64,000 nucleotides of DNA from Octopus bimaculoides (lineage: Eukaryota): the NCBI RefSeq assembly GCF_001194135.2, contig NC_068988.1:28495035-28559034 (forward strand), given 5' to 3'. Below are positions 599 through 64,000 of the stretch, piece after piece (the stretch's first letter is position 1; the number at the start of each line of letters is the position of its first letter). Position numbers and translations under genes: made by a program. The notes under the pieces are model-generated. The model was not told the origin of the DNA. It did not search any database and was given only the letters and a program-made list of their open reading frames with translations.

Positions 599-846
599 AC
601 TAACTCATGCGGTGGAGCCCTCAAGAAAGCGAGTTCTAAAGAAGAGGAAGAAGCTAAAACAAGACTGGAATGCTTTGAAGCAGAGTATGACAGAATCTAT
701 TAAATTACCTTCAACCCTACCTGCGTATTCTGCTCGTGATGTTTTTGACCAGGCAAATCTACAATCAAAGAAAATCTCCATCAAGTTACCTGACACAGTT
801 GCTGTTGAAGAACCATCTGGAGACTTAACAATAAATATGGATACAG
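599..846 (+). CDS. RNPC3: RNPC3 (U11/U12-65K) internal coding exon
   Basis: ctttacag acceptor, gtagac donor; encodes LTHAVEPSRKRVLKKRKKLKQ...; basic linker between the RRMs; end phase 1 matches the next exon. Confidence 0.8.
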
Positions 847-1873: not shown

Positions 1874-1950
1874 AGACACTTAAAACAAATGAACCTGCAG
1901 ACCTGGAACAAAATTCTTCAGGTTTTGGTAAGATTGCGCCTTTAGAAAAG
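1874..1950 (+). CDS. RNPC3: RNPC3 coding exon
   Basis: tttgtatcag / gtaaat; ETLKTNEPADLEQNSSGFGKIAPLEK containing the conserved GFGKI motif; phase 1 to 0. Confidence 0.85.
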
Positions 1951-3668: not shown

Positions 3669-3765
3669 CCGAATTTACCTGTAGAAGAGGTAGAAGATGA
3701 TAAATTCAAAAACATTCAGTTTGTATCAACTGAGAAACTCCGACAAGGAAGGATATCATCGAAAG
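3669..3765 (+). CDS. RNPC3: RNPC3 coding exon
   Basis: attttcag / gtaagg; PNLPVEEVEDDKFKNIQFVSTEKLRQGRISSK, similar to vertebrate FISRRELEKGRIS; phase 0 to 1. Confidence 0.88.
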
Positions 3766-3809: not shown

Positions 3810-4790
3810 TTATCATCATCATCATCATCATCGTTTAACGTCCGCTTTCCATGCTAGCATGGGTTGGACGATTTGACTGAGGACTGGTGAAACCGGATGG
3901 CAACACCAGGCTCCAGTCTGATTTGGCAGAGTTTCTACAGCTGGATGCCCTTCCTAACGCCAACCACTCAGAGAGTGTAGTGGGTGCTTTTACGTGTCAC
4001 CCGCACGAAAACGGCCACGCTCGAAATGGTGTCTTTTATGTGCCNNNNNNNNNNNNNNNNNNNNNNNNNNNNNNNNNNNNNNNNNNNNNNNNNNNNNNNN
4101 NNNNNNNNNNNNNNNNNNNNNNNNNNNNNNNNNNNNNNNNNNNNNNNNNNNNNNNNNNNNNNNNNNNNNNNNNNNNNNNNNNNNNNNNNNNNNNNNNNNN
4201 NNNNNNNNNNNNNNNNNNNNNNNNNNNNNNNNNNNNNNNNNNNNNNNNNNNNNNNNNNNNNNNNNNNNNNNNNNNNNNNNNNNNNNNNNNNNNNNNNNNN
4301 NNNNNNNNNNNNNNNNNNNNNNNNNNNNNNNNNNNNNNNNNNNNNNNNNNNNNNNNNNNNNNNNNNNNNNNNNNNNNNNNNNNNNNNNNNNNNNNNNNNN
4401 NNNNNNNNNNNNNNNNNNNNNNNNNNNNNNNNNNNNNNNNNNNNNNNNNNNNNNNNNNACCACCTCAGCCCAGGTCTTCCTGGGCCTACCTCTTCCACGG
4501 GTTCCCTCAACTGTTAGGGTGTGGCACTTTTTCACGCAGCTATCCTCCTCCATTCTCACCACATGTCCATACCAGCGCAATCGTCTCTCTTGCACGCCAC
4601 AACTGATGCTTCTAATGTTCAGCTTTTCTCTCAAGATACTTACACTCTGACGGGTATTCACATTGACATTACACATCCAACGGAGCATACTGGCTTCATT
4701 CCTTGCGAGCTTACGTATGTCCTCAGCAGTTACAGCCCATGTTTCACTGCCATGTAGCATGGTTGTTCGTACGCATGCGTCATACAGTCT
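3810..4790 (-). mobile_element. 5'-truncated RTE-like LINE (ORF2 C-terminus plus 3' UTR and (GAT)n tail), interrupted by an assembly gap
   Basis: - strand LHGSETW...RRLRWYGHV...RGRGRPRKTWAEV at 4790-4459; 3' UTR and tail at 4044-3810, in the correct order across the N-run; clade assigned by motif only. Confidence 0.8.
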
Positions 4791-5636: not shown

Positions 5637-5731
5637 AAATGAAAGAACTGTCAGTCTTCAAAAACTATCAACCTGGTGAACCATCAAGTCGACTTTATAT
5701 AAAAAATCTTTCCAGACATGTCACTGAGGAT
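5637..5731 (+). CDS. RNPC3: RNPC3 coding exon (start of RRM2)
   Basis: taattatag / gtaagt; EMKELSVFKNYQPGEPSSRLYIKNLSRHVTED, matching EMETLSVFRSYEPGEPNCRIYVKNL of RNPC3. Confidence 0.95.
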
Positions 5732-6401: not shown

Positions 6402-6460
6402 GACTTGTGGAAGATATTTGGTTTCTACATCAATTCCAAAAATGAAGATGAAAGGAACAT
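6402..6460 (+). CDS. RNPC3: RNPC3 coding exon (RRM2)
   Basis: ctctttcag / gtaagt; DLWKIFGFYINSKNEDERNM; phase 0 to 2. Confidence 0.92.
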
Positions 6461-7369: not shown

Positions 7370-7502
7370 GTTTTACATCAGACTCATGCAAGAAGGACGG
7401 ATTCGAGGGCAGGCCTTTATTACTCTTCCAAATGAAAAAGTAGCCAAAGTAGCCTTGGAAGACACTAATGGCTTTGTTCTCTACAACAGACCTATGGTAG
7501 TA
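7370..7502 (+). CDS. RNPC3: RNPC3 coding exon (RRM2, RNP1)
   Basis: gatttcag acceptor; FYIRLMQEGRIRGQAFITLPNEKVAKVALEDTNGFVLYNRPMVV; ends at the U12-type donor GTATCCTTT. Confidence 0.95.
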
Positions 7503-8774
7503 GTATCCTTTTCATGATGATGATGATGATAATAATAATGACAATAATAATAATAATAATAGACACATTAGAAATGATAAAAAAATATTCAGACAAATAC
7601 ATAACAAAAACACCAGGACATAGCACTACTAGGCATTGCACCCATCCTACGTAAAACACTTTCAATACAGTAAAAATAAGAGCACAACAAACCACAGCAC
7701 ATACCCAAGGCATACAGAGCTGTGCTCGGTAGTGAAGTGAAAGCATATGATAAAAATAAGGTTACTGAATAATACTAATAATAACAACTCTTATCATGGG
7801 TGGTCATGATGGGTATTATGGGCTTCATATATTTGTACCCCAGTGTCACTTTGATAGCATTTGCTGCTCTCTCAATAATAATTTTTAATGTCCACCTTTT
7901 CCATACTTTCATGGGTCTGACAGAATTTGTTGAAGCAGATTTTTCTGCAGCTGGATGCTCTTCCTGTTGCTAACCTATACTTGTCCCCAAACAAAATCTT
8001 TAGAGAAAATCTGCTTCAATAAATTCTGCAAGCATGAAAAAGTGGACGTTAAAAGGATGGAAATGAAGTATGATTGATAAAACAAGGTAAGTAGTAGTTT
8101 TTTTTCTGTGATTTTTTTTTTTTTTCTAAATTTTTTACTTCTAACAATTTTTTTAATATTCTCAGCTATGTCAGTAATTTTTTGTTTGATCTACAATATA
8201 CTCTTAAATTAAGAAATACTGGTCTATTCTCATATCTACTGCATTTGATGGTATAAAAACACACATGGGGATATTAGACACATTCTAATTTCAGCATATT
8301 TAGAGAGAAACAATTCTTAGTGCATTTAAACTAGCCATATCTGGCCTAAATAAACTACCTGTTTTACATTCAAGCTATCAAAATCTGACCTCTCACACCC
8401 ACCCCGCAATGTCATTCTAAAAATATACAATTACTTCATCAAAATCTCAAAGCTTCAAAATAATGCATGATTCATTAAAAAAATAATGAGAATAAATACG
8501 TATTACATTTAGATAGAGTAATCTGTATGCTAAAGAATTAAAGCATGTAATATAGGCCCAAATTAGCATATTGGACACTGGGTAATTTGTTTGAAACTTT
8601 AAAAAAAAAATAAGTATGTGTTATATGCCATAAAAAATGGTAAGCGTCATTTGATAATGAAGAGAGAAGGCATTGTCTGAGTTTGGTGTATTTTGGAAAG
8701 CAAAGCAAATTGACGTGATTTTTGATGCATTTAATTTCTTTTTCAATGTAAAATAATCCTTAACTTATTTCCAG
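7503..8774 (+). other. RNPC3: U12-type (minor spliceosome) GT-AG intron in RNPC3
   Basis: 5' site GTATCCTTT at 7503, branch site TCCTTAAC at 8757-8764, AG at 8773-8774; splicing restores the conserved PMVV|QFARSA. Confidence 0.93.
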
Positions 8775-8819
8775 CAATTTGCCAGGTCTGCAAAACAGAA
8801 AGAAGGGGAGAAAAAATAG
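8775..8819 (+). CDS. RNPC3: RNPC3 last coding exon
   Basis: QFARSAKQKEGEKK* matches the vertebrate C-terminus QFARSARPKQ...; TAG at 8817-8819. Confidence 0.93.
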   Translation, partial: QFARSAKQKEGEKK

Positions 8820-8856: not shown

Positions 8857-8862
8857 AATAAA
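8857..8862 (+). promoter_or_regulatory. candidate RNPC3 polyadenylation signal
   Basis: first AATAAA after the stop codon, 37 nt downstream; AT-rich context makes chance occurrence possible. Confidence 0.5.
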
Positions 8863-10014: not shown

Positions 10015-10211
10015 TTTTCTTTTATATGTTTGTCATTTGACTGCGACCATGCTGGAGCACTACCTTTAGTCAAACAAATTGACCTCAGAACTTATTCTTT
10101 GTAAGCCTTGTACTTATTCAATCAGTCTCTTTTGCCAAATCGCTAAGTTACAGGGATGTAAACACACCAGCATCAGTTGTCAAGCGATGGTGGGGGGGGG
10201 GACAAACACAG

Positions 10212-10243
<32 letters not shown>

Positions 10244-10408
10244 GACGGGGCTTCTTTCAGTTTCCATCTCCCAAATCCACTCACAAGGCTTTGGTCGGCC
10301 CGAGGCTATAGTAGAAGACACTTGCCCAAGGTGCCACACAGTGGGACTGAACCCGGAACCATGTGGTTGGTAAGCAAGCTACTTGCCACACAGCCACTCC
10401 TGCGCCTA
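10015..10408 (-). mobile_element. tRNA-headed SINE, family A (representative full copy)
   Basis: head GCAGGAGTGGCTGTGTGG...GGTTCAGTCCC (A/B-box-like), internal (TA)n(TG)n, tail ...GACTGAAACAAG. Other copies at about 5922-6100(+), 6790-7115(+), 21973-22390(+), 24853-25170(-), 29995-30385(+), 30596-30972(+), 33340-33800(-), 33826-34215(+), 39450-39850(-), 39960-40395(+), 46530-46850(-), 60780-61160(-). Confidence 0.85.
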
Positions 10409-12020: not shown

Positions 12021-12477
12021 TACGATTTCGATATGCTATCATTTGTAGCTTTCTCTACTTCAAGTTAAAAATGAATTATTACATCTCTTGAAATTTCCAA
12101 ATTCTTATGACATAAATAACCTGCAATTCTCACTGGTAAAAACAAAACATATAAAATGAATAAATAAATTCGAATGAATGCTTTGGTTCAATGGTAGAAC
12201 ATCTGTCTTTTTCACAGATGTGGGTTCAAGTCCCATGGATAACCTGCGACTCTTTCTATGCTATGTGTTTTTTAACCCAATATTTACATGCTATTTATTT
12301 ATAGCTTTATCTGCTTCAAGTTCTACAGTTAGAAAGTAGTTGCTTCATTTTTTCATTATTGTAGATATTTGTATTTCTGTAATTAGTTAAAACAAACATA
12401 GTTTACTAATAAAACCTTCAGTGAACTAATGAATATACAGCTTACTAACAAAGCTACACATTGGAAAGGTGTGTTAC

Positions 12478-20211: not shown

Positions 20212-21452
20212 CTGGAAGAAAATGTAAAATGAAAAGGATTACAATTCCCTTTATGGAGTAAAAAGTAAGAAATAGGAAAAAACAAATTAAATTAAATATC
20301 ATAAGTAATTTTAACATCTATTTAATTAATGTATTGTAAGTACCAGTTGCATTGCACACTGGGGGTCAATATAATTAACTAACCCCTCCCCGAAAATTGC
20401 TGGCCTGGTGTCAAAATTTGAAACCAATATTATCAGGGTGGTGAACTGGCAGGCTTATTACAGCCTTGGAAAATGCTTTATAGTATTTACTTCAACTTTT
20501 CACATTCTGAGTTCAAATCCTGCTAGGGTCAGCTTAGCCTTTCATCTCTTTAGGGTCAAGTTCTGGGGTCAATGGTATTGGTTAACCACCTTTTCTCAAA
20601 ATTTCTGCCTTGAAACTAAACAGCAACATCGTAACATCTTTGCTATCATAACACTCCACACCAACATCATAACTGTTTCAACAATACATGTAAATTTCTA
20701 TCTGTGAGACTTGAGACTAACAGATTTGATCTTGTTTCAGAAGTGACACAAGCATGCAACACTGACAAGCTGCAACAATGAGGAAATACATATCTGTAGC
20801 TCTTGTAATCACTTAAAGGGTGATTTTAACTTTGCCTAGCTCTGAAGCATAGTGTTTTTTGTTTTTTTTTATACAGTATGTCTATAAAGGGACAAAAAAC
20901 TGCAGCTTCTTGCTTTTCAATAACACACACATTAAACATCATCATCATCATCATCGTTTAATGTCCGCTTTCCATGCTAGCATGGGTTGGACGATTTGAC
21001 TGGGGACTGGCGAACCAGATGGCTACACCAGGTTCCAATCTGATTTGGCAGAGTTTCTACAGCTGGATGCCCTTCCTAATGCCAACCACTCCGTGAGTGT
21101 TCTGGGTGCTTTTTACGTGCCACCAGCACGAAGGCCAGTCCAGCGGTACTGGCAACAGCCACGCTCAAAATGGTGTTTTTTACGTGCCACCTGCACAGGA
21201 GTCAGTCCAATGTTTTGTTCACATGCCACCAGCACGAGTGCCAGTAAGGCGAAGCTGGAAACAATCGCGCTCAAATGGTGCTTTTTATGTGCCATGTTAT
21301 ATAAATGAAGATTTCACTCTAGAGTTGCTTCTATTGCATAATTCAAATTTTATTCAATTACTTTAATTGTTCACAGGAAATTGAGAAAACATTGAAAAAA
21401 ATAAAAACTGGGACATTGTCTAAAATGTCTGTATTGATGTGTATTTACTTAC

Positions 21453-21629: not shown

Positions 21630-22144
21630 CTGAAATCAATATCAAAGTTCAATAAATGAGATTGAAGTAAGGAGCAAGAAATTAGATAATACATTGAATA
21701 ATATTTGGAGTTTATTTTATGAAGATTGGTTCCTTCAAGTGAGTCTCTGCAAGTAATTAGACATAGACTGAAGTCTCATACAATTACCAGGTCCCTTGAT
21801 GTGCATCTAAATAAAGTTAGCAATCTGGTGGAGGATAGAATATATTCCATTATATTTTCTTTTATATTTTTTTACTAGTTGAAACGCAGACTGATTTTTT
21901 GAGACATTTTGTGGGGGGAAAAAACATGCCTTATATGCCTTCAAATATGGTACTTACACTATAATTCAAACAGGCACAGGAGCGGTTGTGTGGTAAATAG
22001 CTTGCTTACCAACCACATGGTTCCGGGTTCAGTCCCACTGCATGGCACCTTAGGCAAATGTCTTCTATTATAGTCTCGGGCCGACCAAAGCCATGTGAGT
22101 GGATTTGGTAGATGGAAACTGAAAGAAGCCTGTCGTATACATGC

Positions 22145-22178
<34 letters not shown>

Positions 22179-22509
22179 ATATGTTTGTGTGTCTGTGTTT
22201 GTCCCCCCAACATTGCTTGACAACCGATGGTGGCGTGTTTACATCCCCCGTAACTTAGCAGTTCAGCAAAAGAGACTGATAGAATAAGTACTAGGCTTAC
22301 AAAGAATAAGTTTTAGGGTCCATTTGCTCGACTAAAGGCAGTGCTCCAGCATGGCCACAGTCAAATGACTGAAACAAGTAAAAGAGTAATAAGGTTGTTG
22401 TGGTAACTGAATCACTGAGAAGCTCAACGAGAGACCCATTCAATATATAAAGATTTGATGGCAATTTTTAACAGTTTTGCAGAAGTAAATAAGTTGTGAA
22501 ATAACTAAC

Positions 22510-24320: not shown

Positions 24321-25880
24321 CTGAAGAACAGAAACCAAACAATATTCAGATTAATTAATCTTTTAGTATTCAGATTATTCCATCAAATGTAATGCTTATT
24401 AATTCACATCATTTTCAATTAATCATGTGTGATCTTGTAGTGTCAAGATTTCAATGATGTGATTCTTTATTATTCGAATGACATTGTAGGTTAGATGTGA
24501 AAGGTCAGATCTAGCTGGTTTGAACATAAAGCAGGAAGAATATTTGGGCCTGATATGGCCGGTCTAAATGCTGAATAATTAAACAATGTAGAATAGTTTC
24601 TTGTTTAGAAATGTTGAAAAAATGAAGGAGTTGATATAAGGTTTAGAAAAAAAAAACAATGCAAAAATATAGAGAAACATATATATAGAGACCCCCCCCC
24701 CNNNNNNNNNNNNNNNNNNNNNNNNNNNNNNNNNNNNNNNNNNNNNNNNNNNNNNNNCCCACATTATACCTCTTTAATTGTGTGGACACTACTCTTTAGC
24801 ACAATGCCCAGGTGGGTTAAATCATGAAAAACTGCATAAGGTATCTCATTACTCTCTTTTACTCGTTTCAGTCATTTGACTGCGGCCAAGCTGGAGCACC
24901 GCCTTTAGTCGAGCAAATCAACCCCAGGACTTATTCTTTGTAAGCCTAGTACTTATTCTATCGGTCTCTTTTGCCGAACCGCTAAGTTACGGGGACGTAA
25001 ACACACCAGCATCACTTGTCAAGCGATGTTGGGGGGACAAACACAGACACACAAACACACATATACGACGGGCCTCTTTCAGTTTCTGTCTACCAAATCC
25101 ACTCACAAGCCTTTGGTCGGCCTGAGGCTACAGTAGAAGACACTTGCCCAAGGTGCCACACACTTGGACTGAACCCGGGTTACAGATTTAAATGCATCAA
25201 ATGACATTATTTTGCATCTAGAAATAAATCTTTCAAAAACGATGACATCCATTTACTTTTCAGATGTCTGTGTATATACGTATTAGTAGGAAATTCTAAA
25301 TATATATCTATCTTTGTTTATCACAGGTATTTGATTAAAAAAAAAACAAAACAACCATATTAAATGAATCAGAGATAAATGAATTATAGAACATATGGTA
25401 AAATAGGTTTTGTTCCTGATCCCAAGTTCTCCCTCTGACTTACCCAAATAACACCTCCAAACAGCTTTTAAACATGCATAATGATATTGTTTCATGTTTG
25501 GAAAAATATTTAGAGTAAAATTCAATAACATATGACCAGTAAATGATTAAAAAGTAACTGAAAAACATCATAAGAAGCAGAATTTTTGACTAATCACCGA
25601 TCTGTGTTATCACAGATCAATTAGTGATAAGCATAAAATAGTTCACAATAGAGTGTATCATGTTATTCTGGATCAGTGATGAATGGATCAGTGATAAATA
25701 AGGATAAATGTATAACTCTTCTATTTCCATAGGTTTACATTATAACTGATTAATGCCTTATAACTGATCAATACAAAATTCCACTAAAACAATGTACAAT
25801 TTCACAGGGATTAAAATCTTATATATATTTGGATTTGGAGTAAATAAGACTAAAATAAGGTTGAAAATAGGATTACTCAC

Positions 25881-29455: not shown

Positions 29456-30426
29456 CTGGAATCATGCAAAATAAAATAGTCAATGAAGTAGAAACTTATT
29501 TATAGATGCTAAAAAATATATATATATATATATATACATTGGACACAGAAACTCAGCTTGCGAAGACCTGTTGAAGCAAGTGAAAGAGAAATCGTGATGG
29601 CACATGTGCCGGTGGCACGTGTAAGGACATTCGAGCGAGATAGTTGCCAGTGCCGCTGGACTGGTTCCCGTGCAGGTGGCACATTAAAGACATCATTTTG
29701 AGCGTGGCCATTGCCAGTACTGCTTGACTGGCCTTTGTGCCGGTGGTACGTAAAAGCACCCACTACACTCTCGGAATGGTAGGCGTTAGGAAGGGCATCC
29801 AGCTGTAGAAACTCTGCCAAATCAGATTGGAGCCTGGTGTAGCCATCTGGTTCACCAGTCCACAGTCAAATCGTCCAACCCATCCTAGCATGGAAAGCAG
29901 ATGTTAAACGATGATGATGATGATGATGATGATGATCAGCAGATTGCAGCTTGCCAAAAGGAGGAGGAAGTGTTTGTCTAATAATTTAATGTCCTTCTAT
30001 GTTGGTGCAGGCATGACTGTGTACTGAAGAAGCTTGCTTTGCTACCATGTTGTTTAGGGTTCAGTCCCACTGTGTGACATCTTAGGCAAGTGACTTCTAC
30101 TGTAACCCTGGGGCCAACAAATGCTTTGTGAATGAACTTGGTAGAAGGGAAACTATGAAAGATTGTCATATAAATATGCATGTGTTTGTCTCCTCTGACC
30201 AACACCCACTTGACAATCAGGTTGGTCTGTTTACTGTAACTTAGCGACTAAGCAAAAGAAACCAACAGAATAAGTACAAAACTTAAAAACAAAAAAAATA
30301 AATTCTGGGTTGATTTGGTTGACTAAACATCTTCAAGGTGGTTCTCTAGCATGGCCACAGTCTAATTATTGAAACAAGTAAAAAACTAGAAGATAAAGGA
30401 TAAATTAAATAATTAAAATTACTTAC

Positions 30427-30519
30427 ATAACTGAGCCCAGCCCATTCATTTTGCCTTCTTTCCAGCAACCTTCATAGATTTCTTCAGAGTCTGATTTGGG
30501 TACAATATATTTTCCATTT
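30427..30519 (-). CDS. ALS2: alsin exon (MORN)
   Basis: NGKYIVPKSDSEEIYEGCWKEGKMNGLG. Confidence 0.93.
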
Positions 30520-31338
30520 CTGAAACACAACACATATATTGATAAATAAATTTGAGAACCAAAAATAAATAAATAAATAAAAATAAAATAACATACGCAG
30601 GAGTGGCTGTGTGGTAAGTAGCTTGCTTACCAACCACATGGTTCCGGGTTCAGCCCCACTGCGTGGCACCTTGAGCAAGTATCTTCTACTATAGCCTCAG
30701 GCCGACCAAAGCCTTGTGAGTGGATTTGGTAGACGGAAACTGAAATAAGCCTGTCATATATATGTCGTATATATATATAAATGTATATATATATGTGTGT
30801 GTTTGTGTGTCTGTGTTTGTCTCCCCAACATTGCTTGATAACCAATGCTGGTGTGTTTACGTCCCCATAACTTAGCGGTTCGGCAAAAGAGACCGATAGA
30901 ATAAGTACTAGGCTCGACTAAAGGTGGTGCTCCAGCATGGCCGCAGTCAAATGACTGAAACAAGTAAAAGAGTGATCTGGGTTGAGCAGCTTGAGGTTTC
31001 AAGGTGTACATGTGTGTGTGTATGCATGCATACATATATTTGTATATGTTTGTATGTAATGTATGTATGCACACGTGTGTTTCACAAAATGCATTTGTTC
31101 AGGTTTTTGTTCAAAAACTTGAACGAGTGTTTTTTCTTATTTTTGATGAAACTCAAAGTATCTACAAAATTAATCATTTTCTCTTTTCTCAACACCAAAC
31201 ACACTTGACTATTTTTTATCTCAGCTCTTAAAGAGTTCAACAAATTTTCTGTTTTATTATTACCTGGACACTACTCTAGGAACAAACAAAATTTTCTACA
31301 GAACACATATACCTTGGTACATTTTTACAATTACTTAC

Positions 31339-32289: not shown

Positions 32290-33000
32290 GTGAGGAAGAG
32301 TATGAGGAGGAGTGATGAGATGAAGGAGGGAGGAGAGGAAANNNNNNNNNNNNNNNNNNNNNNNNNNNNNNNNNNNNNNNNNNNNNNNNNNNNNNNNNNN
32401 NNNNNNNNNNNNNNNNNNNNNNNNNNNNNNNNNNNNNNNNNNNNNNNNNNNNNNNNNNNNNNNNNNNNNNNNNNNNNNNNNNNNNNNNNNNNNNNNNNNN
32501 NNNNNNNNNNNNNNNNNNNNNNNNNNNNNNNNNNNNNNNNNNNNNNNNNNNNNNNNNNNNNNNNNNNNNNNNNNNNNNNNNNNNNNNNNNNNNNNNNNNN
32601 NNNNNNNNNNNNNNNNNNNNNNNNNNNNNNNNNNNNTGAGGAGGGGAAAAGAGGAAGATGAGGAGGGGAAGAGAAAGAGGAAGATGAGGAGGGGAAAAGA
32701 GGAAGATGAGGAGGGGAAGAGAAAAAGGAAGATGAGGAGGGGAAGAGAAAGAGGAAGATGAGGAGGGGAAGAGAAAGAGGAAGATGAGGAGGGGAAGAGA
32801 AAGAAGATGAAGATGAGGAGGGGAAGAGAAAGAAGATGAAGATGAGGAGTGGAAGAGAAAGAAGAGGAAGCTGAGGAGGGGAGGAGAAAGAAGACGAAGT
32901 GAGGAGGGGAAGAGAGAGAAGACGAAGATGAAGAGGGGAAGAGAAAGAAGAGGAAGGTGAGGAGGAGAAGAGAAAGAAGAGGAAGGGGTGGGGACAGGAG
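32290..33000 (+). repeat. polypurine (GAGGAA/GAAGAT-type) tandem low-complexity tract, partly in a gap
   Basis: repeating AGAGGAAGATGAGGAGGGGAAGAGAA-like units; N-run 32342-32636. Confidence 0.9.
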
Positions 33001-33593: not shown

Positions 33594-33955
33594 NNNNNNN
33601 NNNNNNNNNNNNNNNNNNNNNNNNNNNNNNNNNNNNNNNNNNNNNNNNNNNNNNNNNNNNNNNNNNNNNNNNNNNNNNNNNNNNNNNNNNNNNTAAGCCT
33701 AGTACTTATTCTATCAGCATCTTTTGCCGAACCGCTAAGTTACAGGGATGCAAACATACCAACATCAGTTGTCAAGTGATGGTGGTGGGGACAAACACAG
33801 ATATACAAACATATACATACATACAGCCACAAGGTTCCAGATTCAGTCCCACTGTGTGGCGCCTGGGACATGTGTCTGCTACTATAGATTCAGGCTGACC
33901 AAAACCTTGTGAGTGGATTTGGTAGATGGAAACTAAAAGAAGCCTGTTGTTTGCA

Positions 33956-34003
<48 letters not shown>

Positions 34004-34277
34004 TTGCCCCCACCACCACCACCACCACTGCTTAACAACCAGTGTTGATGTGTTTACGTTCCCATAACTTAGCAGTTTGGCAAAAGATACTGATAGAACA
34101 AGTACCAGGCTTAAAAAAAAAAGGAAAAAATTACTGGGGTTGACTTGTTCAACTAAAATTCAAGGCAGTGCCCCAGCATGGCCACAGTCTAATGACTGAA
34201 ACAAGCAAAAGATAAAGGATAAAAGAAAAAAACATGAATAAAAGTGATTACTTTAAAGAAGTTCTTAGCCTCTAAAC

Positions 34278-35392: not shown

Positions 35393-36431
35393 CTGCAGAA
35401 AAAAAAAACAGAAAAGAAAAAAAAAGACAAAAATTTACATTGAAATCATGTGATCATGTGACCGACTAGACTTTCAGATGTTGTTACACATCGCTGGTCA
35501 CAATGCACTTTGCATTGTTTTAGCCCTCAAACGACACCACCCCACCGGCTAGGTAAGCAGGCCAACATTCCCCACCAATCAAAAGGGGGACTGGGACAAT
35601 GTGAAATGAAGTGTTTTGTTCAAGAACACAATGTATTGCCTGATCAGGGAATTGAACCCCTGATCTACCAATCATGAGTGCAACACCCTAACCACAAGGC
35701 CATGCACCTTCACACACTGATATAGATCAAACAAATAAAGTCAGTTTTATTCCCAAACTACCACTTATGACTATTGACTATTTTTACCAATAATACTAAA
35801 GACCTTTTACATTATTCTTTATTTTTCTTGAGCCTCAGGGCTTACTATGTTGGTTACCCAATTTTCAGTGCCACTGGACTGGCTCTTGTGCGGGTGGCAT
35901 GTAAAATACACCATTTTGAGCGTGGCCGTTGCCAGTACCGTCTGACTGGCCTTCGTGCCGGTGGCACATAAACGCACCCACTACACTCTCAGAGTGGTTG
36001 GCGTTAGGAAGGGCATCCAGCTGTATACACTCTGTCAAATCAGATTGGAGCCTGGTGTAGCCATCTGGTTTCACCAGTCCTCAGTCAAATCGTCCAACCC
36101 ATGCTAGCATGCAAAGCGGACATTAAATGATGATGATGATGATGATGAAATGACTGGAATCACAACATTTCTCCTAGACAGGACACAAATCCAAAGCAGA
36201 GTTCAAGCTCAGTAATTTTGAGGGGAGGGGACAAGAAAATTACATCAACCCTAGTACCTGACTGTTACTTTATTTTACCGATACCAAAGGATGAAAACTT
36301 CATAACTGCAACTATGTGATTGCAAAGCAATGCAAACTTCTTGGCCACAGAGTCAAATCTGTGCTCATGTATGATTAGATCATCTTTTTTATCTAAAAGC
36401 TCAAAAGATAAAAATTTAGCTGAATACTCAC

Positions 36432-39219: not shown

Positions 39220-39385
39220 TGATGGGTATCCCAGAGATAATTTATTTATCATATGGCCATATTCATTAGGCCTGTGTAAAGGATATTGCAGTATACGTTG
39301 AAGGGTGGAAGCATAATTCATTTTCTCCGAAGTCGACTCATCAAGGATCTCAGTAAAAACGTTTTGAATTTTCTCAAAGTAAGAA
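39220..39385 (-). CDS. ALS2: alsin exon (DH)
   Basis: STLQRILQYPLHRPNEYGHMINKLSLGYPS; cttcag / gtgagt. Confidence 0.9.
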
Positions 39386-40159
39386 CTGAAGGAAAAAAAA
39401 AAGGAAAGAAAATATGACAATTCAATGAAGAAGAAAAGAGTCTTTATTTTTTATCTTTAATTTGTTTCAGCCATTGGACTGCAGCCATGCTGGGCACCAC
39501 CTTGAAGAGTTTTGACCAATCAGATTGACCCCAGAACTTATTCTTTTAAAAGGGCTGGTCTTTATTTTATTGATCTTTTTTGCCAAACTGTTAAGTTATG
39601 GGCATATAAACAAATCAACACCATGATGGTGGTGGTGGGGAACAAACACAAACACCCCCCCCCACACACACATGGACATACATATACCCTTATACAAACA
39701 ACAGACTTCCACACAGTTTCTGTCTACCAAATTCATTCAGAAAGCATTGGTTGGTCTGAGGCTATTGTCAAAGATACTCGTTGAAGTGCTACACAGTGGG
39801 ACTGAACCCAGAACCATGTGGTTGCCAACCGAGCTTCTTATCACACAGCCATGCCTGCACTTATAGAGAGTAAATAATCAACTAAATAATTATTACAAAA
39901 TTATTAAAAAATATGTCAAATCTCTTTGTCGAAATGTAACCACAATCTAAAACATGTATGTGACGAACAGCTGTGTGGTAAGAAGCTTGCTTACCAACAC
40001 ATAGTTTCGGGCTCAGTCCCACTGCATGGCACCTGGGGCAAATGTCTTCTACTATAGCCTCGGGCCAACCAAAGCCTTGTGAATGGATTTTGGTAGACAG
40101 AAACTGAAAGAAGCCATTCGTATANNNNNNNNNNNNNNNNNNNNNNNNNNNNNNNNNNN

Positions 40160-40626: not shown

Positions 40627-41979
40627 CTAAGAATGTAAAGGTTAATTAACAATTTAAATTAAATTTAAATAAAATAGCAACTTTATATTTATGAAACACC
40701 ACACAACTTACAGCTAATGACAATAATTCAACAAATTATTATTTTCAATTATATGTTTTCAATTATAAAAAAAAAATTGTTACATTTTTGTTTTATCTTT
40801 TAGTCAGAAAGGAATGCAACGCCCATGACCTTTTAAAGGGCCTCTGTGACTTTGTTTACTTACTGACTGCACCAAGTGTAAATGGCAGTGTACATATAAT
40901 TTAATGATTAGTGGCAGAAGAAGTATCAATACCAAAAGGTAATCTTTATATCCGACTTAACATGGACGCCCTGTCAGAACACTGAATACAGTGTTATTAG
41001 GCTTCAGAGATTCTCATATATAGGTGTTTGATGCATAAAAACACATGTGTGACAGCCAAGGTTTTGGAAGTTGTTAGATGAGGTACTCTGGTTAAAATGG
41101 TGAACAAACAGCAATGAGTGTAGTTTACGATGCATATGATACATTCTATGCACCATCATCATCATCATCGTTTAACGTCTGCTTTCCATGCTAGCACGGG
41201 TTGGACGATTTGACTGAGGACTGGCGAACCAGATGGCTGCACCAGGCTCCAATCTAATCTGGCAGAGCTTCTACAGCTGGATGCCCTTCCTAACACCAAC
41301 CACTCCGAGAACCAGTCAGGTGGTACTGGCAACAGCCATGCTCAAGTGGTATTTTTTACGTGTCACCTGCACAGGAGCCAGTCCAGCGGCACTGGCAATG
41401 ACCTCGCTCGAATGGTGCTTTTTATGTGCCACCTGCACAGAAGCCAGTCAGCTGCTCTGGCAGTGGTCACGCTCGGATAGTGCTCTTAGCGCTCCACTGG
41501 CACAGGTGCCAGTCATCGAATTTGCGAATTTGATTTGATGTAAACCTGGTGTACATGTATTATGGTAAACAGTGGAGACCAATGCAGCCCACAGGTTTGT
41601 TAGACTCTGTTGAGCTGTCCAACCCATTCCAGTATAGAACATGGATGTTAAATGATGATGATGAGTATCCAAAAAAACTAACCAGAAAAATCACTGTAGT
41701 GAGAAAAAAATGTTATTCATTTCAGTCAGTAAGCGAGGTCATTTAGAAAATGTTTCAGCTTTCTAAACTCTGTCATTGCTCTATACTTTTTTTTGTGGAC
41801 AGTGTAGAATACATTTTATGTAAGTTAACGAATCCAAAATGAGTCACTTTCTAACTCCTGTGGAGCAAAAACTGTTCAATATTCTTTAGGTGAAATTTTT
41901 TGTCATTTGCGTACCTTCTGATCGACTGATTCTTTTAGAATAAATGGTAAAGAAATATATTCACACTCAATGAACTCAC

Positions 41980-48899: not shown

Positions 48900-49230
48900 G
48901 ATCTCACTTTATTTGCCGGGTCTTCTCAGTCACAGCATACCTCCAGAGGTCTCTGTCTTTCATCATTTCCTCTGTGAGGCCCAACGTTCGAAAGTCATGC
49001 TTCACCACCTCATCCCATGTCTTCCTGGGTCTCCCTCTACCCCGGATTCCTTCCACTGTTTGGGAGTGGCACTTCTTCACACATCTCTCCTCATCCATCC
49101 ACAGTACATGACCATACCAACGTAAACGTCTCTCTTGCACGCCACATCCAATGCTTCTTATGTCCAACATTTCTCTCAGGGCGCTTACACTCTGTCATGT
49201 GTGCACACTGACATTACACATCCAGCAGAT
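48900..49230 (-). mobile_element. RTE-like LINE ORF2 C-terminal fragment
   Basis: QERRLRWYGHVLWMDEERCVKKC...RGRGRPRKTWDEVVKHDFRTLGLTEEMMKDRDLWRYAVTEKTRQIK*. Confidence 0.85.
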
Positions 49231-50063: not shown

Positions 50064-50782
50064 NNNNNNNNNNNNNNNNNNNNNNNNNNNNNNNNNNNNN
50101 NNNNNNNNNNNNNNNNNNNNNNNNNNNNNNNNNNNNNNNNNNNNNNNNNNNNNNNNNNNNNNNNNNNNNNNNNNNNNNNNNNNNNNNNNNNNNNNNNNNN
50201 NNNNNNNNNNNNNNNNNNNNNNNNNNNNNNNNNNNNNNNNNNNNNNNNNNNNNNNNNNNNNNNNNNNNNNNNNNNNNNNNNNNNNNNNNNNNNNNNNNNN
50301 NNNNNNNNNNNNNNNNNNNNNNNNNNNNNNNNNNNNNNNNNNNNNNNNNNNNNNNNNNNNNNNNNNNNNNNNNNNNNNNNNNNNNNNNNNNNNNNNNNNN
50401 NNNNNNNNNNNNNNNNNNNNNNNNNNNNNNNNNNNNNNNNNNNNNNNNNNNNNNNNNNNNNNNNNNNNNNNNNNNNNNNNNNNNNNNNNNNNNNNNNNNN
50501 NNNNNNNNNNNNNNNNNNNNNNNNNNNNNNNNNNNNNNNNNNNNNNNNNNNNNNNNNNNNNNNNNNNNNNNNNNNNNNNNNNNNNNNNNNNNNNNNNNNN
50601 NNNNNNNNNNNNNNNNNNNNNNNNNNNNNNNNNNNNNNNNNNNNNNNNNNNNNNNNNNNNNNNNNNNNNNNNNNNNNNNNNNNNNNNNNNNNNNNNNNNN
50701 NNNNNNNNNNNNNNNNNNNNNNNNNNNNNNNNNNNNNNNNNNNNNNNNNNNNNNNNNNNNNNNNNNNNNNNNNNNNNNNNNN
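50064..50782. other. assembly gap (largest of seven)
   Basis: N-runs at 4045-4458, 24702-24757, 32342-32636, 33594-33693, 40125-40159, 50064-50782 and 63068-63077; all fall in introns or flanks, and ALS2/RNPC3 exon phases join across them. Confidence 0.99.
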
Positions 50783-56722: not shown

Positions 56723-59396
56723 TATAAATATACATGTAAGGGTTTTTGAAACTCTCTCAATTATAATTGTGACTTGTTCATAACTATAAATATTCTTCTT
56801 TCATGCATTTTATGATAACATATTTGGCCATCAATATATTCATAAATAATTATTGTTTATGATATATCCTCCATAATGTATTATTGCATTGCTTTTTAAT
56901 TATATATGTGAATTTTTGCTACCCAGGTAACTATTTATTTATTTTTTTCCTTATTTGTACACTCTTTTACTTGTTTCAGTCATTTGACTGCGGCCATGCG
57001 GGAGCACCGCCTTTTAGTCGAGCAAATCAACCTCAGGACTTATTCTTTGGAAGCCTAGTATTTATTCTATCGGTCTCTTTTGCCGAACCGCTAAGTTACG
57101 GGGACGTAAACACACCACCATCGGTTGTCAAGCGAGATGGAAGAGATAGTGAATTCATTGAAGATTGCTTAAAAGTATACTTGACCTGGTTGTCTAATTG
57201 TAATGCAATGTCATTACATCAGCAGTTAAGCCAAGTGAAGCAGATGAAATGGAATAAAACGATCGCTGTTAATTTAAAATAAAAAACAAGATAATAAAGA
57301 AAGAGATAGTGAGAACTGAAAATATATATCAAGTAATATGACAGACATTACATCAAATATTCATATTATTAGATCTTTTCCCATGAGCATGAACACAGTT
57401 ACTGGTTTGACCTAAAATACACAATTTTACTGTAATCAATGTATCTGTTTTCTATTTTCGAGGACACAACTGATAGTAGTAAGTATGTATGTATGTATGT
57501 ACATGTGTACGCATGTATGTACGCATGTATGTATGTATGTATGTATGTATGTTATTATTCAGTTTTATTTCAAGATTTCTTGCCAATAAAGAGCAGGTTT
57601 CTAACCTAGATCTAAGGCTCCTTCATAGGAATTTCAACAACATCAACAGGGTATTTGTACATGTTTGTGTGTATGTGTGCAGTATTTGATGTCAGTGCAT
57701 GTGCAGATTTGAATGTTTTATGTATGTATTCTCTTATTCTCCTGATTCTCCTATCAGCTTCACTGTACAAGAGTCCAACAGCCAATATTATAGCCACCAA
57801 CATTTGGAAATGCCGATAGCAGAAAGTTGGTGTCAATGTTTGTCACAAACTTAATGAATGTCTCACTTGGAGACAGGTGACGGTTGGTAACAGGAAGGGC
57901 TAGAAAATCTGCCTCAACAAATTCCATCTGACCCATGCAAGCATCGAAAAGTGGACATTAAAATGATGATTATAGTGATGGCATGTGTGTGTGTGTGTGT
58001 GTATCTAAAAGAGAGAGCAGCAGATTTGAACCCGAGTGCTACCAAGCATTTGCAATTAGATAAAAAAAAAAGTCCTGAAAAAATACAGTATCAGGTATAT
58101 TTACCACATTAACTGGCAACAGAAACTGCAGTTGAGAGACTGGCTGAGTCTGTGGCAGACGTCAGGGTAACTGTCATTCATAGTACAAACATACTCCTTG
58201 GGGCTATGCACTGAATATATATTATTGGTGCTAACTCTATAAAGTTGACGACATTGTTTTAATGTGAGGGCTCCATTACTCTGAGGTTTATGTCTATGAG
58301 GAGTGACTTTGTGAGGAATACAAATTAACAGGCACATACAAACACTTACATACAACACACATATACACACACACACACGCACACACAATGTGCTTGTATA
58401 TACATACATACAGTCATACATACAGATAGAACGTTATGATGAATTGAGAGATCTTAAATTCAATGGAGCAATACAATACAATAGAATGAAACAGATTCAA
58501 AATTGAATTTTGATGATGTTTTGTCATAAATAAAATAAAGAGAATATTTTGTGATATTTACATTTTCAATGTTTATAGAAATGAATCAGAAAAAATAAAA
58601 ATCAACAACAAACGGTTTAGGGTAAATTTATACAAATTAATAAACTGTGAAGTTAGTCAAAGGAAAGAATTTTTATTTAAAAAAAGAAAAGCACACAATA
58701 TTTCAAATCATGTGCTTGGTGTTTTTAATGGGAGCTTTGTGAGATTTTGTCTCCGTTCTTGATGACCAAATCCATGGAATGTTGTCAAAGAGACTTTTGT
58801 TGTGTGCATGTGTTTCTCTCATTCTATTTCTCTCTCTCTCGTAACTGAAGATTCAAGTTCTAAAATTACTTAAGTCACAGGAAACTCAATGTAACTTAAG
58901 CAACTTCAGCAGTAAGGTCATCACTTACTGTAAAAGTCAAGTTTTTTAGGCTAAAATTTGTAACCAAAAGAGGTAGGTTAACCTATGCACCAAGACGACT
59001 TTGGAGGACCAAAAATTCCATGAGAAATGCAGCAGGATTTGGAAAGATAGCGACGATGTTTGAATGTTTACACTACATGTTTACATTATATACTATGTTG
59101 ATTTGCCAGCTGGAAAATACAGTAGTCTCAGTTTGTCATGTGTCACTGGCAACAGGAAGGGCATCCAGTCATAGAAAATCTGCCTAAATAAAATTCTGGC
59201 CAACACATGCAAACATGGAAAAGTGAACATTGAAACAAAGATAGTGATCGGTATGATAAGCTGGAGAGAGAGTGGAATCCGAAGCTAGTAAGTTAGTCCC
59301 TAACTGACTGTTTAAATTAAATTAAGCCTGATGCTATAGCTGTGGCCCAACTAAAGCCTTGTGAGTGGATTTCATAGATGGAAACTGAAAGAAGCT

Positions 59397-59469: not shown

Positions 59470-59910
59470 TTAGTGAGAGCTGTATAAGCCATGTACAGGG
59501 ATGCTGTCAGTAAGGTGAAGGTTGGCAATGAGTAAAGTGAAGAATTCCAGGTAGGGGTAGGGGTCCATCAAGGATCAGTCCTCAGCCCCCTCTTATACTT
59601 CATAGTCCTCCAGGCAATAACAGAGGAATTCAAGACGGGATGCCCCTGGGAGCTTCTCTATGCTGATAACCTTGCTCTAATAGCTGAGTCACTATCAGAA
59701 CTAGAGGAGAAGTTTCAGGTGTGGAAGCAAGGTCTAAAACACCCACTACACTCTCGGAGTGGTTGGTGTTAAGAAGGGCATCCAGCTGTAGAAACTCTAC
59801 CAAATCAGATTGGAGCCAGGTGTAGCCATCTGCCTTGCCAGCCCTCAGTCAAACCATCCAACCCATGCCAGCATGGAAAGCAGACGTTAGACGACAATAA
59901 TGATGATTAT
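59470..59910 (+). mobile_element. LINE reverse transcriptase fragment joined to the LINE 3' tail
   Basis: GVHQGSVLSPLL and WELLYADNL RT motifs with a stop codon; from about 59737 it continues directly into the common tail ending gatgat. Confidence 0.8.
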
Positions 59911-62551: not shown

Positions 62552-64000
62552 ACTTTTCTATTAGGTTCTAATTTAGTAGCATTTTGTGATTCAAGAACTT
62601 GCTAGTTTAAATATCTGACATATTAAAACAGTCCTGCAAATGTAAATTGTTAAAGGAAATCTTTTAAAATCCACTTTTAGTGAACTCACAGCATTTACTC
62701 CTTTATAAGCTGCACTATTTTTATACTTGATCAAAACTGCAAAAACAGGGTTGTGACTTATACATGGGAGAAAGCTAAAACTTTCATGGTATGCATGACA
62801 ATCTTTGTACCAAGATTTAGCACTAAATTAGGGGTATGACTTATATAAATATATTTTTATCATCTTCGTTTCATGACAGAATCTTACTTTTAACTTTTAT
62901 AACATTAACAAGAAATTTGTCATTTACTTGTCAACTAGAAAAAAACATACAAGTGCATGTCTGGTCTGCACCTGCTTCCACTGCACTGGATTGTTGCATT
63001 ACTTTTTGTATATCATTATAAAGGTCCAACAGGTTTTCTTTTGACTCTTTGAACTTTTCACACAACCNNNNNNNNNNACTTTCTCTCTCAGCTATCTCAG
63101 CAAAACCCACATACCAACTTCAGTTACTTTATACATTCTCATGTTTTGACAGAAAAGTAACAGCAATAATAAAAATATACAAGAGACACAAACCTTGCAG
63201 AGAAAGAATTGATATTTGATTGGGAAAGCTGTACTGGAATACATGGATACATGAAGTCCCCTAGTAGGCAGTTAATACAAGGGAGATAATAATTTCTTCA
63301 TAATATTTGGTGGGATTAGAAGTTGGGACTTGAAATTAAGAAATAATGAAAGAAACGCACAGAATAGTTTCCAGCTGTCTTCTATAGTATTATGACAAAT
63401 ATTTCTATCACAAAGGCTACAACTTCTTCTCAAAGCCAGAAACAACAGCTAGCAAATATGAATACATTAACACACTCCAATTACTAGTCCATGGTCAGGT
63501 TATGCCCCTTCTCCCAAGTTGCCAACCCAATGCCACCGATTCTTCTGAGTTTGACATTTTTATACAGTTGAGAAACCATGTCTTCTTACCCCAAGTCAGT
63601 GCACCTCTCTTCTTCCTCAAACTGGTTCAATCAATCCTAAATCTCCCACATCTGAATCTATCAAGAATTCCCTTCCCACTGCTCAAATTCTTTCTCAAAC
63701 CATTAAACTCAGTGACTCTGAACTGGGGTTCATGTAAGATTTTGTGGTTGAAATTTATCTGCAACAAATTGGTTATACTTCTTCGATATTCAAAATATTT
63801 AAACAATTTTTTTTATACAATTCCCAATAATATTCAAATATATAGGATTTTTTAAACATCGAATGGCTATGGAGGGGGTGGGGTCCAGTAGAGTAAAATA
63901 GCAATTGAAGGATTGATCAGACTATCAGATGTTGTTATACATCGCTGGTCACAATGCACTTTGTATTATCTTAGCTTTGAAATGAAGGCCCCCCCCCCCC

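What the first reader, a model, noticed from the sequence alone, without database searches (positions are those of the whole stretch)
7503..8774. A minor-spliceosome protein gene whose own RNA-binding domain is completed only by minor splicing
Seen: the last RNPC3 intron has a full U12 signature (GTATCCTTT donor; TCCTTAAC branch site ending 8 nt before the AG), while every other intron traced in the window looks U2-type. Retention reads GTA TCC TTT TCA TGA (VSFS*), removing the conserved QFARSA segment that ends RRM2. Established: U11/U12-65K bridges U11 and U12 and binds the U12 snRNA 3' stem-loop through this RRM. Inference: 65K output depends on minor-spliceosome activity, a feed-forward loop present in what appears to be a cephalopod. 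A U12 intron near the end of RNPC3 is, as I recall, also known in vertebrates, so the intron may be ancient rather than new.
Basis: partly seen in the sequence, partly recalled or inferred. Interest (0 to 1): 0.7.

Follow-up and report, generated by a model that had tools for sequence, protein, structure and literature searches.

The report
Conserved U12-type intron in RNPC3
The last coding intron of this animal's RNPC3 gene, which encodes the 65K protein of the minor spliceosome, carries textbook minor-spliceosome splice signals, but it is the same intron already catalogued in human and mouse RNPC3, so it is real and ancient rather than new.

Summary
The exon ends CCT ATG GTA GTA at 7502. The intron starts GTATCCTTT at 7503. 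TCCTTAAC lies at 8757-8764, 8 nt before the AG at 8773-8774. The next exon (8775-8819) reads QFARSAKQKEGEKK*. Retention reads VSFS*.

In a scan with a U12 matrix built from 75 human minor introns, the donor is the best match among 127,976 positions in the window. The branch site ranks in the top six, and its branch A lies 11 nt from the intron end. The five upstream RNPC3 introns are ordinary GTAAGT-like U2 introns.

The same phase-0 intron, between VV and QF, has U12 signals in a related invertebrate contig, a fish and a bird. The Minor Intron Database tables list it for human and mouse RNPC3 (GTT|GTATCCTTT). It is absent from a limpet, a barnacle and several unnamed contigs.

So this is the orthologue of a known minor intron that predates the protostome-deuterostome split. 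The idea that 65K output depends on minor splicing follows logically, and human R502X data support the functional cost of retention. No regulatory loop was tested here. The vertebrate USSE element, which gives negative feedback, is not detectable in this window. Novelty is low. The taxon could not be named.

The parts
599..846 (+). RNPC3 exon, the first one traceable in the window. It encodes the linker region ...LTHAVEPSRKRVLKKRKK...INMDT. The donor is cag|GTAGAC (U2-type). The 5' part of the gene, including RRM1, lies upstream of the window.
   Evidence: ORF and splice-site tracing. The U12 5'ss PWM gives -7.1 bits.
1874..1950 (+). RNPC3 exon (ETLKTNEPADLEQNSSGFGKIAPLEK). The donor is aag|GTAAAT (U2-type).
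3669..3765 (+). RNPC3 exon (PNLPVEE...KLRQGRISSK), the start of the N-terminal extension of the C-terminal RRM. The donor is aag|GTAAGG (U2-type). The intron that follows contains a 414-N assembly gap (4045-4458).
5637..5731 (+). RNPC3 exon (EMKELSVFKNYQPGEPSSRLYIKNLSRHVTED), RRM2 beta1/RNP2. The donor is gat|GTAAGT (U2-type). The intron position is shared with bird RNPC3.
6402..6460 (+). RNPC3 exon (DLWKIFGFYINSKNEDERNM). The donor is cat|GTAAGT (U2-type). The intron position is shared with bird and barnacle RNPC3.
7370..7502 (+). Penultimate coding exon of RNPC3 (FYIRLMQEGRIRGQAFITLPNEKVAKVALEDTNGFVLYNRPMVV). It holds the RNP1 motif and most of RRM2 and ends in phase 0.
   Evidence: Aligned to human 65K C-RRM (3EGN).
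7503..7511 (+). U12-type 5' splice site GTATCCTTT.
   Evidence: Exact consensus. PWM score 16.0 bits, the best of 127,976 positions in the window. Identical 9-mer in fish and in human and mouse. 8 of 9 bases match in the bird. In the related contig L001 the donor reads GTATCCTTTA, so the first 9 bases are identical.
7503..8774 (+). U12-type GT-AG intron, 1,272 nt, phase 0, lying between V and Q of PMVV|QFARSA. The interior is microsatellite (GAT/AAT)n plus repeat-derived sequence.
   Evidence: No Rfam family lies inside it.
7515..7517 (+). In-frame TGA reached if the intron is retained. The product would end ...PMVV-VSFS*.
8757..8764 (+). U12-type branch-point sequence TCCTTAAC.
   Evidence: The 12-mer TAATCCTTAACT scores 11.8 bits, close to the median of known human minor introns, and ranks 6 or better in the window. 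The branch A is 11 nt from the last intron base.
8773..8774 (+). 3' splice site AG.
   Evidence: It restores the frame into the conserved QFARSA.
8775..8819 (+). Last coding exon segment, QFARSAKQKEGEKK plus TAG (8817-8819). [quoted passage not shown]
   Evidence: Norppa et al. 2018.
8857..8862 (+). Candidate poly(A) signal AATAAA, 38 nt after the stop codon. A second one lies at 9293. If the first is used, the U12 intron is the terminal intron.
   Evidence: Pattern match only. No RNA evidence.

Best explanation
The stretch 7503-8774 is a genuine U12-type (minor-spliceosome, GT-AG subtype) intron in the 3' part of the RNPC3 gene, which encodes U11/U12-65K. It is the orthologue of the minor intron already catalogued in human and mouse RNPC3. 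It has kept the same position and phase since before protostomes and deuterostomes diverged, and several invertebrate lineages have lost it.

Proposed mechanism (established for U12 introns in general, inferred here): U11 snRNP pairs with GTATCCTTT. U12 snRNP pairs with TCCTTAAC and bulges the branch adenosine 11 nt upstream of the AG. The two snRNPs bind as a di-snRNP that is held together by the 65K protein itself. Excision joins PMVV to QFARSA..., which completes beta4 and the C-terminal tail of RRM2.

If the intron stays in, the frame stops after four codons (VSFS*). The product would lack the tail residues that human 65K needs to bind the U12 and U6atac 3' stem-loops. Unspliced U12-intron transcripts are also typically retained and degraded in the nucleus.

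Productive 65K mRNA therefore requires minor-spliceosome activity. This is a built-in positive dependence, inferred rather than shown.
For: Shown here:
- Exact splice-signal coordinates and reading frames.
- The donor ranks 1 and the branch site ranks 6 or better among 127,976 window positions, scored with a PWM from 75 human minor introns. The branch-to-3'ss distance is 11 nt.
- The five upstream introns are GTAAGT-like, with U12 scores of -7 to -13 bits.
- Gene identity: the C-RRM matches human 65K structures 3EGN and 5OBN at E=2e-43, ahead of the paralogue RBM41.
- Orthologous introns occur at the same VV|QF, phase-0 position. The related invertebrate contig L001 has GTGGTT|GTATCCTTTA with TTTTCCTTTATT 12 nt from the AG. 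Its intron is 2.2 kb, and its flanking intron sequence does not visibly resemble the window's by eye. The fish Nerophis has GTT|GTATCCTTTT with TTGCCTTTAACT. The bird Oceanites has GTT|GTATCTTTTT with TAGTCCTTAACA 11 nt from the AG.
- The four last intron positions are identical between the bird and the window, and only the last is U12-type in both.
- P0013, a 161-aa protein 71% identical to the window's, spans the positions of the window's last four introns without interruption and reads ...RPMVVQFARSAKQKEESNK. It must come from spliced mRNA of a relative.

From papers:
- Olthof et al. 2019, Table S2, lists mouse and human RNPC3 as minor-intron genes with 5'ss GTTGTATCCTTT.
- Baumgartner et al. 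[quoted passage not shown]
- Norppa et al. 2018: R502X, which truncates inside QFARSA, causes complete loss of U12 and U6atac binding, and residues 502-506 are critical.
Against: - There are no RNA reads from this organism, so use of the 7502/8775 junction and of the minor spliceosome is inferred from sequence and orthology.
- The spliced relative (P0013) is from an unnamed source, and its own gene structure is unknown.
- In L001 the branch site is weaker (TCCTTTAT).
- The immediate stop after retention (VSFS*) is not conserved. L001 reads on for 39 codons and the fish for 15, so the short peptide itself is not a selected feature.
- The positive-dependence idea has no experimental support here. 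I found no paper in the searchable library that states or tests it.
- In vertebrates the documented control of 65K is a negative loop through the USSE.
Confidence: 0.9

Rival explanations
1. The intron is removed by the major (U2-dependent) spliceosome, and the U12-like motifs are a relic. Removal would use either the same GT or one of the upstream GTA triplets at 7497 or 7500. This resembles the U12-to-U2 conversion seen in lineages that are losing minor introns.
For: The intron is of the GT-AG subtype, which is the class that can convert. Three GT dinucleotides lie within 7 nt of each other. The 8 nt before the AG are pyrimidine-rich (TTATTTCC). Other invertebrates have lost this intron outright.
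Against: As a U1 site, gta|GTATCC has neither -1G nor +5G. The upstream alternatives (atg|GTAGTA and gta|GTAGTA) would delete one or both valines of the PMVVQFARSA motif, which is conserved across the orthologues compared. Both U12 motifs are at or near consensus and correctly spaced. The 5'ss is conserved in a relative whose remaining intron sequence, by eye, shows no obvious similarity. The genome encodes an intact-looking 65K, which argues for a working minor spliceosome.
Confidence: 0.04
2. GTATCCTTT acts mainly as a U11-binding regulatory element, like the vertebrate USSE. It would recruit U11/U12 to control a neighbouring U2-type splice or 3'-end choice, rather than serving as the productive donor.
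For: RNPC3 in vertebrates does use U12-type 5'ss copies in this way (Verbeeren 2017; Akinyi and Frilander 2021). I recovered that tandem element in the fish locus (GTATCCTTATtcgagcATATCCTTTG at L004 40863).
Against: A USSE is a tandem pair in non-coding sequence. Here there is a single copy, placed exactly at the coding exon boundary and paired with a consensus branch site and an AG that restore the frame. No tandem pair of U12 5'ss-like motifs exists near the RNPC3 3' end or elsewhere in the window. In the fish, the donor copy and the USSE coexist as separate elements.
Confidence: 0.03
3. The locus is a non-functional or mis-assembled copy of RNPC3, so the splice signals have no current role.
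For: The scaffold is a draft with seven N-runs, one of them inside RNPC3 intron 3. The 5' half of the gene is outside the window.
Against: All seven traced exons keep an open frame, have canonical splice sites and carry conserved RRM residues. The same gene, with the same neighbour, is intact in a related contig.
Confidence: 0.03

Closest known systems
The minor (U12-type) intron of human RNPC3 (chr1:103551074-103551720, 647 nt) and mouse Rnpc3 (chr3:113608412-113609037, 626 nt), listed in the Minor Intron Database tables of Olthof et al. 2019
   Same: It lies in the same gene, with the same upstream codon context (valine codon|GTATCCTTT). The 5'ss 9-mer is identical, it is the same GT-AG subtype, and a branch motif CCTTAA sits near the 3' end. 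Positional identity (VV|QF, phase 0) was verified here in fish and bird genomic DNA.
   Different: The window's branch site is a better consensus match (TCCTTAAC, against human ACCTTAAT and mouse GCCTTAAT). The intron is about twice as long. In vertebrates the exon after it is the penultimate exon and is followed by a 3'UTR intron that carries the USSE. Here no USSE is detectable, and a poly(A) signal lies 38 nt after the stop codon.
[quoted passage not shown] 2010, 2017)
   Same: Both tie the expression of a minor-spliceosome protein to U11/U12 recognition of a U12-type 5'ss sequence in its own pre-mRNA.
   Different: The USSE is a tandem pair of 5'ss-like motifs that are not used as donors. 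It activates an upstream U2-type 3'ss and gives non-productive mRNA, so more U11 means less 65K. Here a single motif is the productive donor, so more minor-spliceosome activity should mean more 65K. No tandem element is present in the window. The fish positive control was found.
SRSF10 minor intron: minor-spliceosome level sets the output of a splicing factor (Meinke et al. 2020)
   Same: Productive mRNA requires use of a minor splice site, so protein output follows minor-spliceosome abundance.
   Different: SRSF10 has competing major and minor 5' splice sites plus an autoregulatory exon, and this has been shown experimentally. For RNPC3 here, no conserved competing site is evident and nothing has been tested.

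Membership tests
U12-type (minor) intron, GT-AG subtype | 5' splice site matching /RTATCCTT from intron position +1 | tested here: met
   GTATCCTTT at 7503-7511. PWM 16.0 bits, above the median of 75 known human minor introns (14.0), and rank 1 of 127,976 window positions.
U12-type (minor) intron, GT-AG subtype | Branch-point sequence matching TCCTTRAC | tested here: met
   TCCTTAAC at 8757-8764. The 12-mer scores 11.8 bits against a training median of 11.8, and ranks 6 or better in the window.
U12-type (minor) intron, GT-AG subtype | Short, constrained distance from the branch adenosine to the 3' splice site (about 10-15 nt) | tested here: met
   The branch A is 11 nt from the last intron base. 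The distance is 11-13 nt in the orthologous introns of L001, fish and bird.
U12-type (minor) intron, GT-AG subtype | Excision depends on U11, U12, U4atac and U6atac snRNPs | not testable with these tools
   This needs RNA-seq or RT-PCR after minor-spliceosome inhibition. No snRNA genes lie in the window (Rfam scan).
U12-type (minor) intron, GT-AG subtype | Positional orthology with an accepted minor intron | tested here: met
   The same VV|QF phase-0 position carries U12 signals in fish and bird. It also matches the human and mouse MIDB entries for RNPC3.
RNPC3 / U11/U12-65K orthologue | C-terminal RRM with its N-terminal extension, closer to 65K than to the paralogue RBM41 | tested here: met
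   3EGN and 5OBN ('RNA-binding protein 40') at E=2.4e-43, 151 bits, over residues 125-249 of the traced protein. RBM41 scores 85 bits.
RNPC3 / U11/U12-65K orthologue | N-terminal RRM and the U11-59K-binding region | not testable with these tools
   The 5' half of the gene lies upstream of the window. The first traceable exon starts at 599.
[quoted passage not shown] | Tandem repeat of two U12-type 5'ss-like motifs in non-coding sequence downstream of the coding region | tested here: not met
   [quoted passage not shown] The same scan finds the fish USSE. An element beyond the window, or a more degenerate one, is not excluded.

The most novel reading that the evidence does not exclude
This lineage shows no USSE-type negative feedback element. 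The U12 intron might therefore be the only link between minor-spliceosome activity and 65K supply, giving a pure positive autoregulatory loop. Such a loop could make minor-spliceosome capacity switch-like between tissues or developmental stages. A leaked intron-retaining mRNA would encode a 65K that lacks the snRNA-binding tail. That protein could still bind U11-59K and so act as a dominant inhibitor of di-snRNP formation.
Probability: 0.1. Interest if true: 0.45.

Novelty: already known. Interest (0 to 1): 0.2.

Why it matters
The finding shows that one of the seven proteins specific to the minor spliceosome has needed the minor spliceosome to make its own mRNA since before protostomes and deuterostomes split. 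The intron sits at the same codon boundary inside the RNA-binding domain in both groups. This is a good example of deep conservation of a minor intron, and of a self-referential dependence that may help explain why minor splicing is hard to lose piecemeal. The intron itself is already in the human and mouse catalogues, and large cross-species surveys of minor introns exist. The added value is therefore limited to three points. It documents the intron in this invertebrate lineage. It shows the loss of the intron in a limpet and a barnacle. It notes that the vertebrate USSE is not evident in this window.

Tried and rejected
1. Chance occurrence. Counting each 8-mer alone gives chance-level numbers, so motif counts cannot support the finding. 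I used a PWM rank plus position relative to the reading frame instead.

2. USSE search. I scanned the window and L001 for tandem U12 5'ss-like pairs. None is convincing. The fish positive control was found.

3. Naming the organism. All three protein searches returned only unnamed close relatives (P0005 and P0097 on one ENA contig; P0013 from metaclust; P0095 and P0096 from Logan). No named cephalopod protein appeared, so 'cephalopod' stays unverified.

4. Wider taxon sampling. Four look-ups (P0001, P0044, P0042, P0037) gave contigs from unnamed ENA assemblies or JGI metagenome samples with an uninterrupted ORF across VV|QF. They show absence of the intron but cannot be placed taxonomically.

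5. Other strong U12 5'ss matches in the window. GTATCCTTC at 56369 (+) is antisense to an RCC1-repeat exon of the minus-strand gene and was dismissed. ATATCCTTT at 39286 (-) lies in an open frame of that gene, but no branch site with an AC or AG follows within 12 kb. There is no PDB match to place the exon end. ALS2 is not in the MIDB tables. This one is unresolved and probably exonic by chance.

6. Literature. Niemela et al. 2015 (PMC4829294), on USSE conservation, is not held. Verbeeren 2010 was not available. A search for an explicit positive-feedback proposal for RNPC3 found nothing relevant.

7. The GC dip at 50-52 kb and the GC skew at 32-34 kb turned out to be N-runs and purine-rich repeats next to gaps. 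They are not features.

Full report
**Observation**

The exon ends ...AGA CCT ATG GTA GTA at 7502 (RPMVV). The next bases are GTATCCTTT (7503-7511). TCCTTAAC lies at 8757-8764. Eight bases (TTATTTCC) separate it from the AG at 8773-8774. From 8775 the frame reads QFARSAKQKEGEKK and then TAG. Reading through the donor gives VSFS and then TGA at 7515-7517.

**Gene model**

I traced seven exons on the + strand: 599-846, 1874-1950, 3669-3765, 5637-5731, 6402-6460, 7370-7502 and 8775-8819. The 250-residue product matches the crystal and NMR structures of the C-terminal RRM of human U11/U12-65K (3EGN and 5OBN, 'RNA-binding protein 40') at E=2e-43. That is clearly above the paralogue RBM41 at 4e-23. 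The 5' half of the gene lies upstream of the window.

The five upstream introns have donors GTAGAC, GTAAAT, GTAAGG, GTAAGT and GTAAGT, with ordinary pyrimidine-rich acceptors.

**Is it more than chance?**

Counted alone, the two 8-mers occur at chance frequency in the window. I therefore built position-weight matrices from 75 human minor introns, using the 5'ss and branch 12-mers in Table S2 of Olthof et al. 2019 and leaving RNPC3 out.

- The donor 12-mer GTAGTATCCTTT scores 16.0 bits, against a training median of 14.0. It is the single best match among 127,976 positions on both strands.
- The branch 12-mer TAATCCTTAACT scores 11.8 bits, equal to the training median, and ranks in the top six.
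- The branch adenosine is 11 nt from the intron end.
- The other five RNPC3 donors score -7 to -13 bits. None of those introns has a branch match at a suitable distance.

Both top-ranked motifs flank exactly the point where a conserved reading frame breaks and resumes. This is not coincidence.

**Related sequences**

A search with the C-terminal peptide returned P0005. This is an ORF called on a 215-kb ENA contig and reads ...HRPMVV-VSFTLCS..., which is a read-through of the same donor.

In that locus (L001) the exon ends ATG GTG GTT|GTATCCTTTA. After 2,164 nt the acceptor ...TTTTCCTTTATTTTTTACCAG|CAATTTGCTCGCTCTGCA resumes QFARSAKQKDENKK*. The 5'ss is kept, while by eye the sequence flanking it inside the two introns shows no obvious similarity; I did not align the introns. 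The same contig also carries the window's minus-strand neighbour gene (P0097), so the two loci are syntenic.

P0013 is a 161-aa protein, 71% identical to the window's. It runs uninterrupted across the positions of the window's last four introns and reads ...RPMVVQFARSAKQKEESNK. It can only come from spliced mRNA of a relative.

**Vertebrates**

In the pipefish Nerophis ophidion the exon ends CTG GTG GTT|GTATCCTTTTCAC. The acceptor is ...TTGCCTTTAACTACAAACCACAG|CAATTTGCT.

In the storm-petrel Oceanites oceanicus the donor is GTT|GTATCTTTTT. The branch site is TAGTCCTTAACA, 11 nt from the AG. The bird shares all four of the last intron positions with the window, and in both only the last one is U12-type.

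Table S2 of Olthof et al. 2019 lists mouse Rnpc3 and human RNPC3 as minor-intron genes. Both have the 5'ss GTTGTATCCTTT, with branch sequences AAAGCCTTAATG (mouse) and GAAACCTTAATT (human). The intron coordinates are chr1:103551074-103551720 in human. Baumgartner et al. [quoted passage not shown]

The intron is therefore already known in vertebrates. The window holds its orthologue.

**Losses**

No intron interrupts VV|QF in the following:

- the limpet Lottia gigantea, where the last 168 codons are one ORF;
- the barnacle Pollicipes pollicipes, which keeps the preceding intron position;
- five contigs from unnamed ENA assemblies or JGI metagenome samples.

The intron is present in vertebrates and in this protostome lineage at the same codon boundary, with the same class of signals. 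The simplest account is an intron older than the protostome-deuterostome split, with repeated losses.

**How it most likely works**

The following is established for U12 introns in general and inferred here. The U11/U12 di-snRNP recognises the 5'ss and branch site together, and 65K is the protein bridge of that di-snRNP (Verbeeren 2017 introduction). Splicing joins V to Q and completes beta4 and the C-terminal tail of RRM2.

Human data show why that tail matters. R502X truncates the protein inside QFARSA, leaves the fold intact and abolishes binding to the U12 and U6atac stem-loops. Residues 502-506 are critical (Norppa et al. 2018). A retained intron would end the protein four residues earlier than that, at the equivalent of V498.

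Productive 65K mRNA should therefore depend on minor-spliceosome activity. This is a positive autoregulatory dependence rather than a feed-forward loop. It is a logical corollary and was not demonstrated here. I found no paper in the searchable library that proposes or tests it. The immediate VSFS* stop is not conserved in L001 or in the fish, so the short read-through peptide itself is unlikely to be selected.

**Relation to the known control of this gene**

In vertebrates, 65K is controlled negatively by the USSE. This is a tandem pair of U12 5'ss-like motifs in a 3'UTR intron. It binds U11 and diverts splicing to a nuclear-retained isoform. I recovered this element in the fish locus, 4.4 kb after the stop codon (GTATCCTTATtcgagcATATCCTTTG).

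[quoted passage not shown] An AATAAA lies 38 nt after the stop codon. This lineage may therefore have the donor-type dependence without the USSE brake. An element outside the window, or a degenerate one, is not excluded.

**Rivals**

- Major-spliceosome removal is unlikely. The site is a very poor U1 target. The nearby GTA donors would delete conserved valines. Both U12 motifs are consensus and correctly spaced.
- A USSE-like regulatory role for the motif is unlikely. It is a single copy at the coding boundary with a matching branch site and acceptor.
- A dead gene copy is unlikely. All traced exons are open and conserved, and the syntenic relative is intact.

**Limits**

There is no RNA evidence from this organism. 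The taxon could not be named, because all close relatives in the databases are anonymous. It is not shown whether this is the terminal intron.

**Verdict**

It is the orthologue of a catalogued minor intron, so novelty and interest are low.

Noticed in passing
window ~12,450-56,600, minus strand: A large gene on the opposite strand, convergent with RNPC3, has an alsin (ALS2)-like domain order. RCC1 repeats lie at 56,581-56,162 and in a 622-codon exon at 54,688-52,823. MORN repeats lie at 29,499-29,278 and 28,221-27,934. A VPS9 domain lies at 12,684-12,457 (Pfam). The best homologue of the big exon (P0097, 80% identity) lies on the same ENA contig as the RNPC3 relative P0005, so the gene pair is syntenic.
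   Followed up: partly
window 39,286 (minus strand; motif 39,286-39,278): gca|ATATCCTTT scores 15.6 bits with the U12 5'ss matrix, second best in the window. It lies in an open frame of the alsin-like gene (...EKMNYASTLQRIL, possibly the start of the DH domain). No branch site with an AC or AG was found within 12 kb downstream. There was no PDB match to fix the exon end, and ALS2 is not in the human or mouse minor-intron tables. It is either an exonic coincidence or an AT-AC intron whose acceptor I could not find.
   Followed up: partly
window 56,369 (+): ata|GTATCCTTC scores 14.5 bits as a U12 5'ss. It lies antisense to an RCC1-repeat exon of the minus-strand gene, so it is probably a chance match.
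   Followed up: partly
window 4045-4458, 24702-24757, 32342-32636, 33594-33693, 40125-40159, 50064-50782, 63068-63077: There are seven runs of N (assembly gaps), so the window is a draft scaffold. One gap is inside RNPC3 intron 3. The gaps, together with purine-rich GAGGAGG repeats at 32-34 kb, explain the GC dip at 50-52 kb and the GC-skew spike at 32-34 kb in the composition profile.
   Followed up: yes
window, many sites, for example 3881-4040 (+), 21000-21305 (+), 29512-29865 (-), 35868-36080 (-), 41214-41477 (+), 59633-59848 (-); and 10070-10408, 21962-22312, 24880-25122, 30487-30917, 33775-34159, 39506-39863, 56863-57279: At least two families of short interspersed repeats recur throughout the window, including inside RNPC3 introns. 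They are recognisable by recurring pseudo-translations (…KPDG.TRLQSDLAEFLQLDALPNANHSESVVGAF…, and …SFSFHLPNPLTRLWSA.GYSRRHLPKVPHSGTEPGTMWLVSKLL…), often next to (GAT)n or (TA/CA)n microsatellites. They were not classified.
   Followed up: no
window 12,177-12,242 (+): A weak Rfam tRNA match (31.7 bits, gathering threshold 29) that ARAGORN does not call. It is probably a tRNA-derived repeat head rather than a tRNA gene.
   Followed up: partly
window 59,536-59,769 (+) and 48,907-49,194 (-): These ORF fragments look by eye like remnants of a retrotransposon polyprotein (…GVHQGSVLSPLLYFIVLQAITEEF…YADNLALIAES…, and …LRWYGHVLWMDEERCVKKC…GRPRKTWDEVV…). Pfam gave only a weak AT-hook hit for the second, and the first was not scanned.
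   Followed up: no
L004 (Nerophis ophidion) 40,863-40,888: This is the vertebrate RNPC3 USSE: a tandem GTATCCTTAT and ATATCCTTTG, 16 nt apart start to start, lying 4.4 kb downstream of the stop codon. A U2-type donor (CAG|GTATGT) follows directly after the stop codon. It served as a positive control for the USSE scan.
   Followed up: yes
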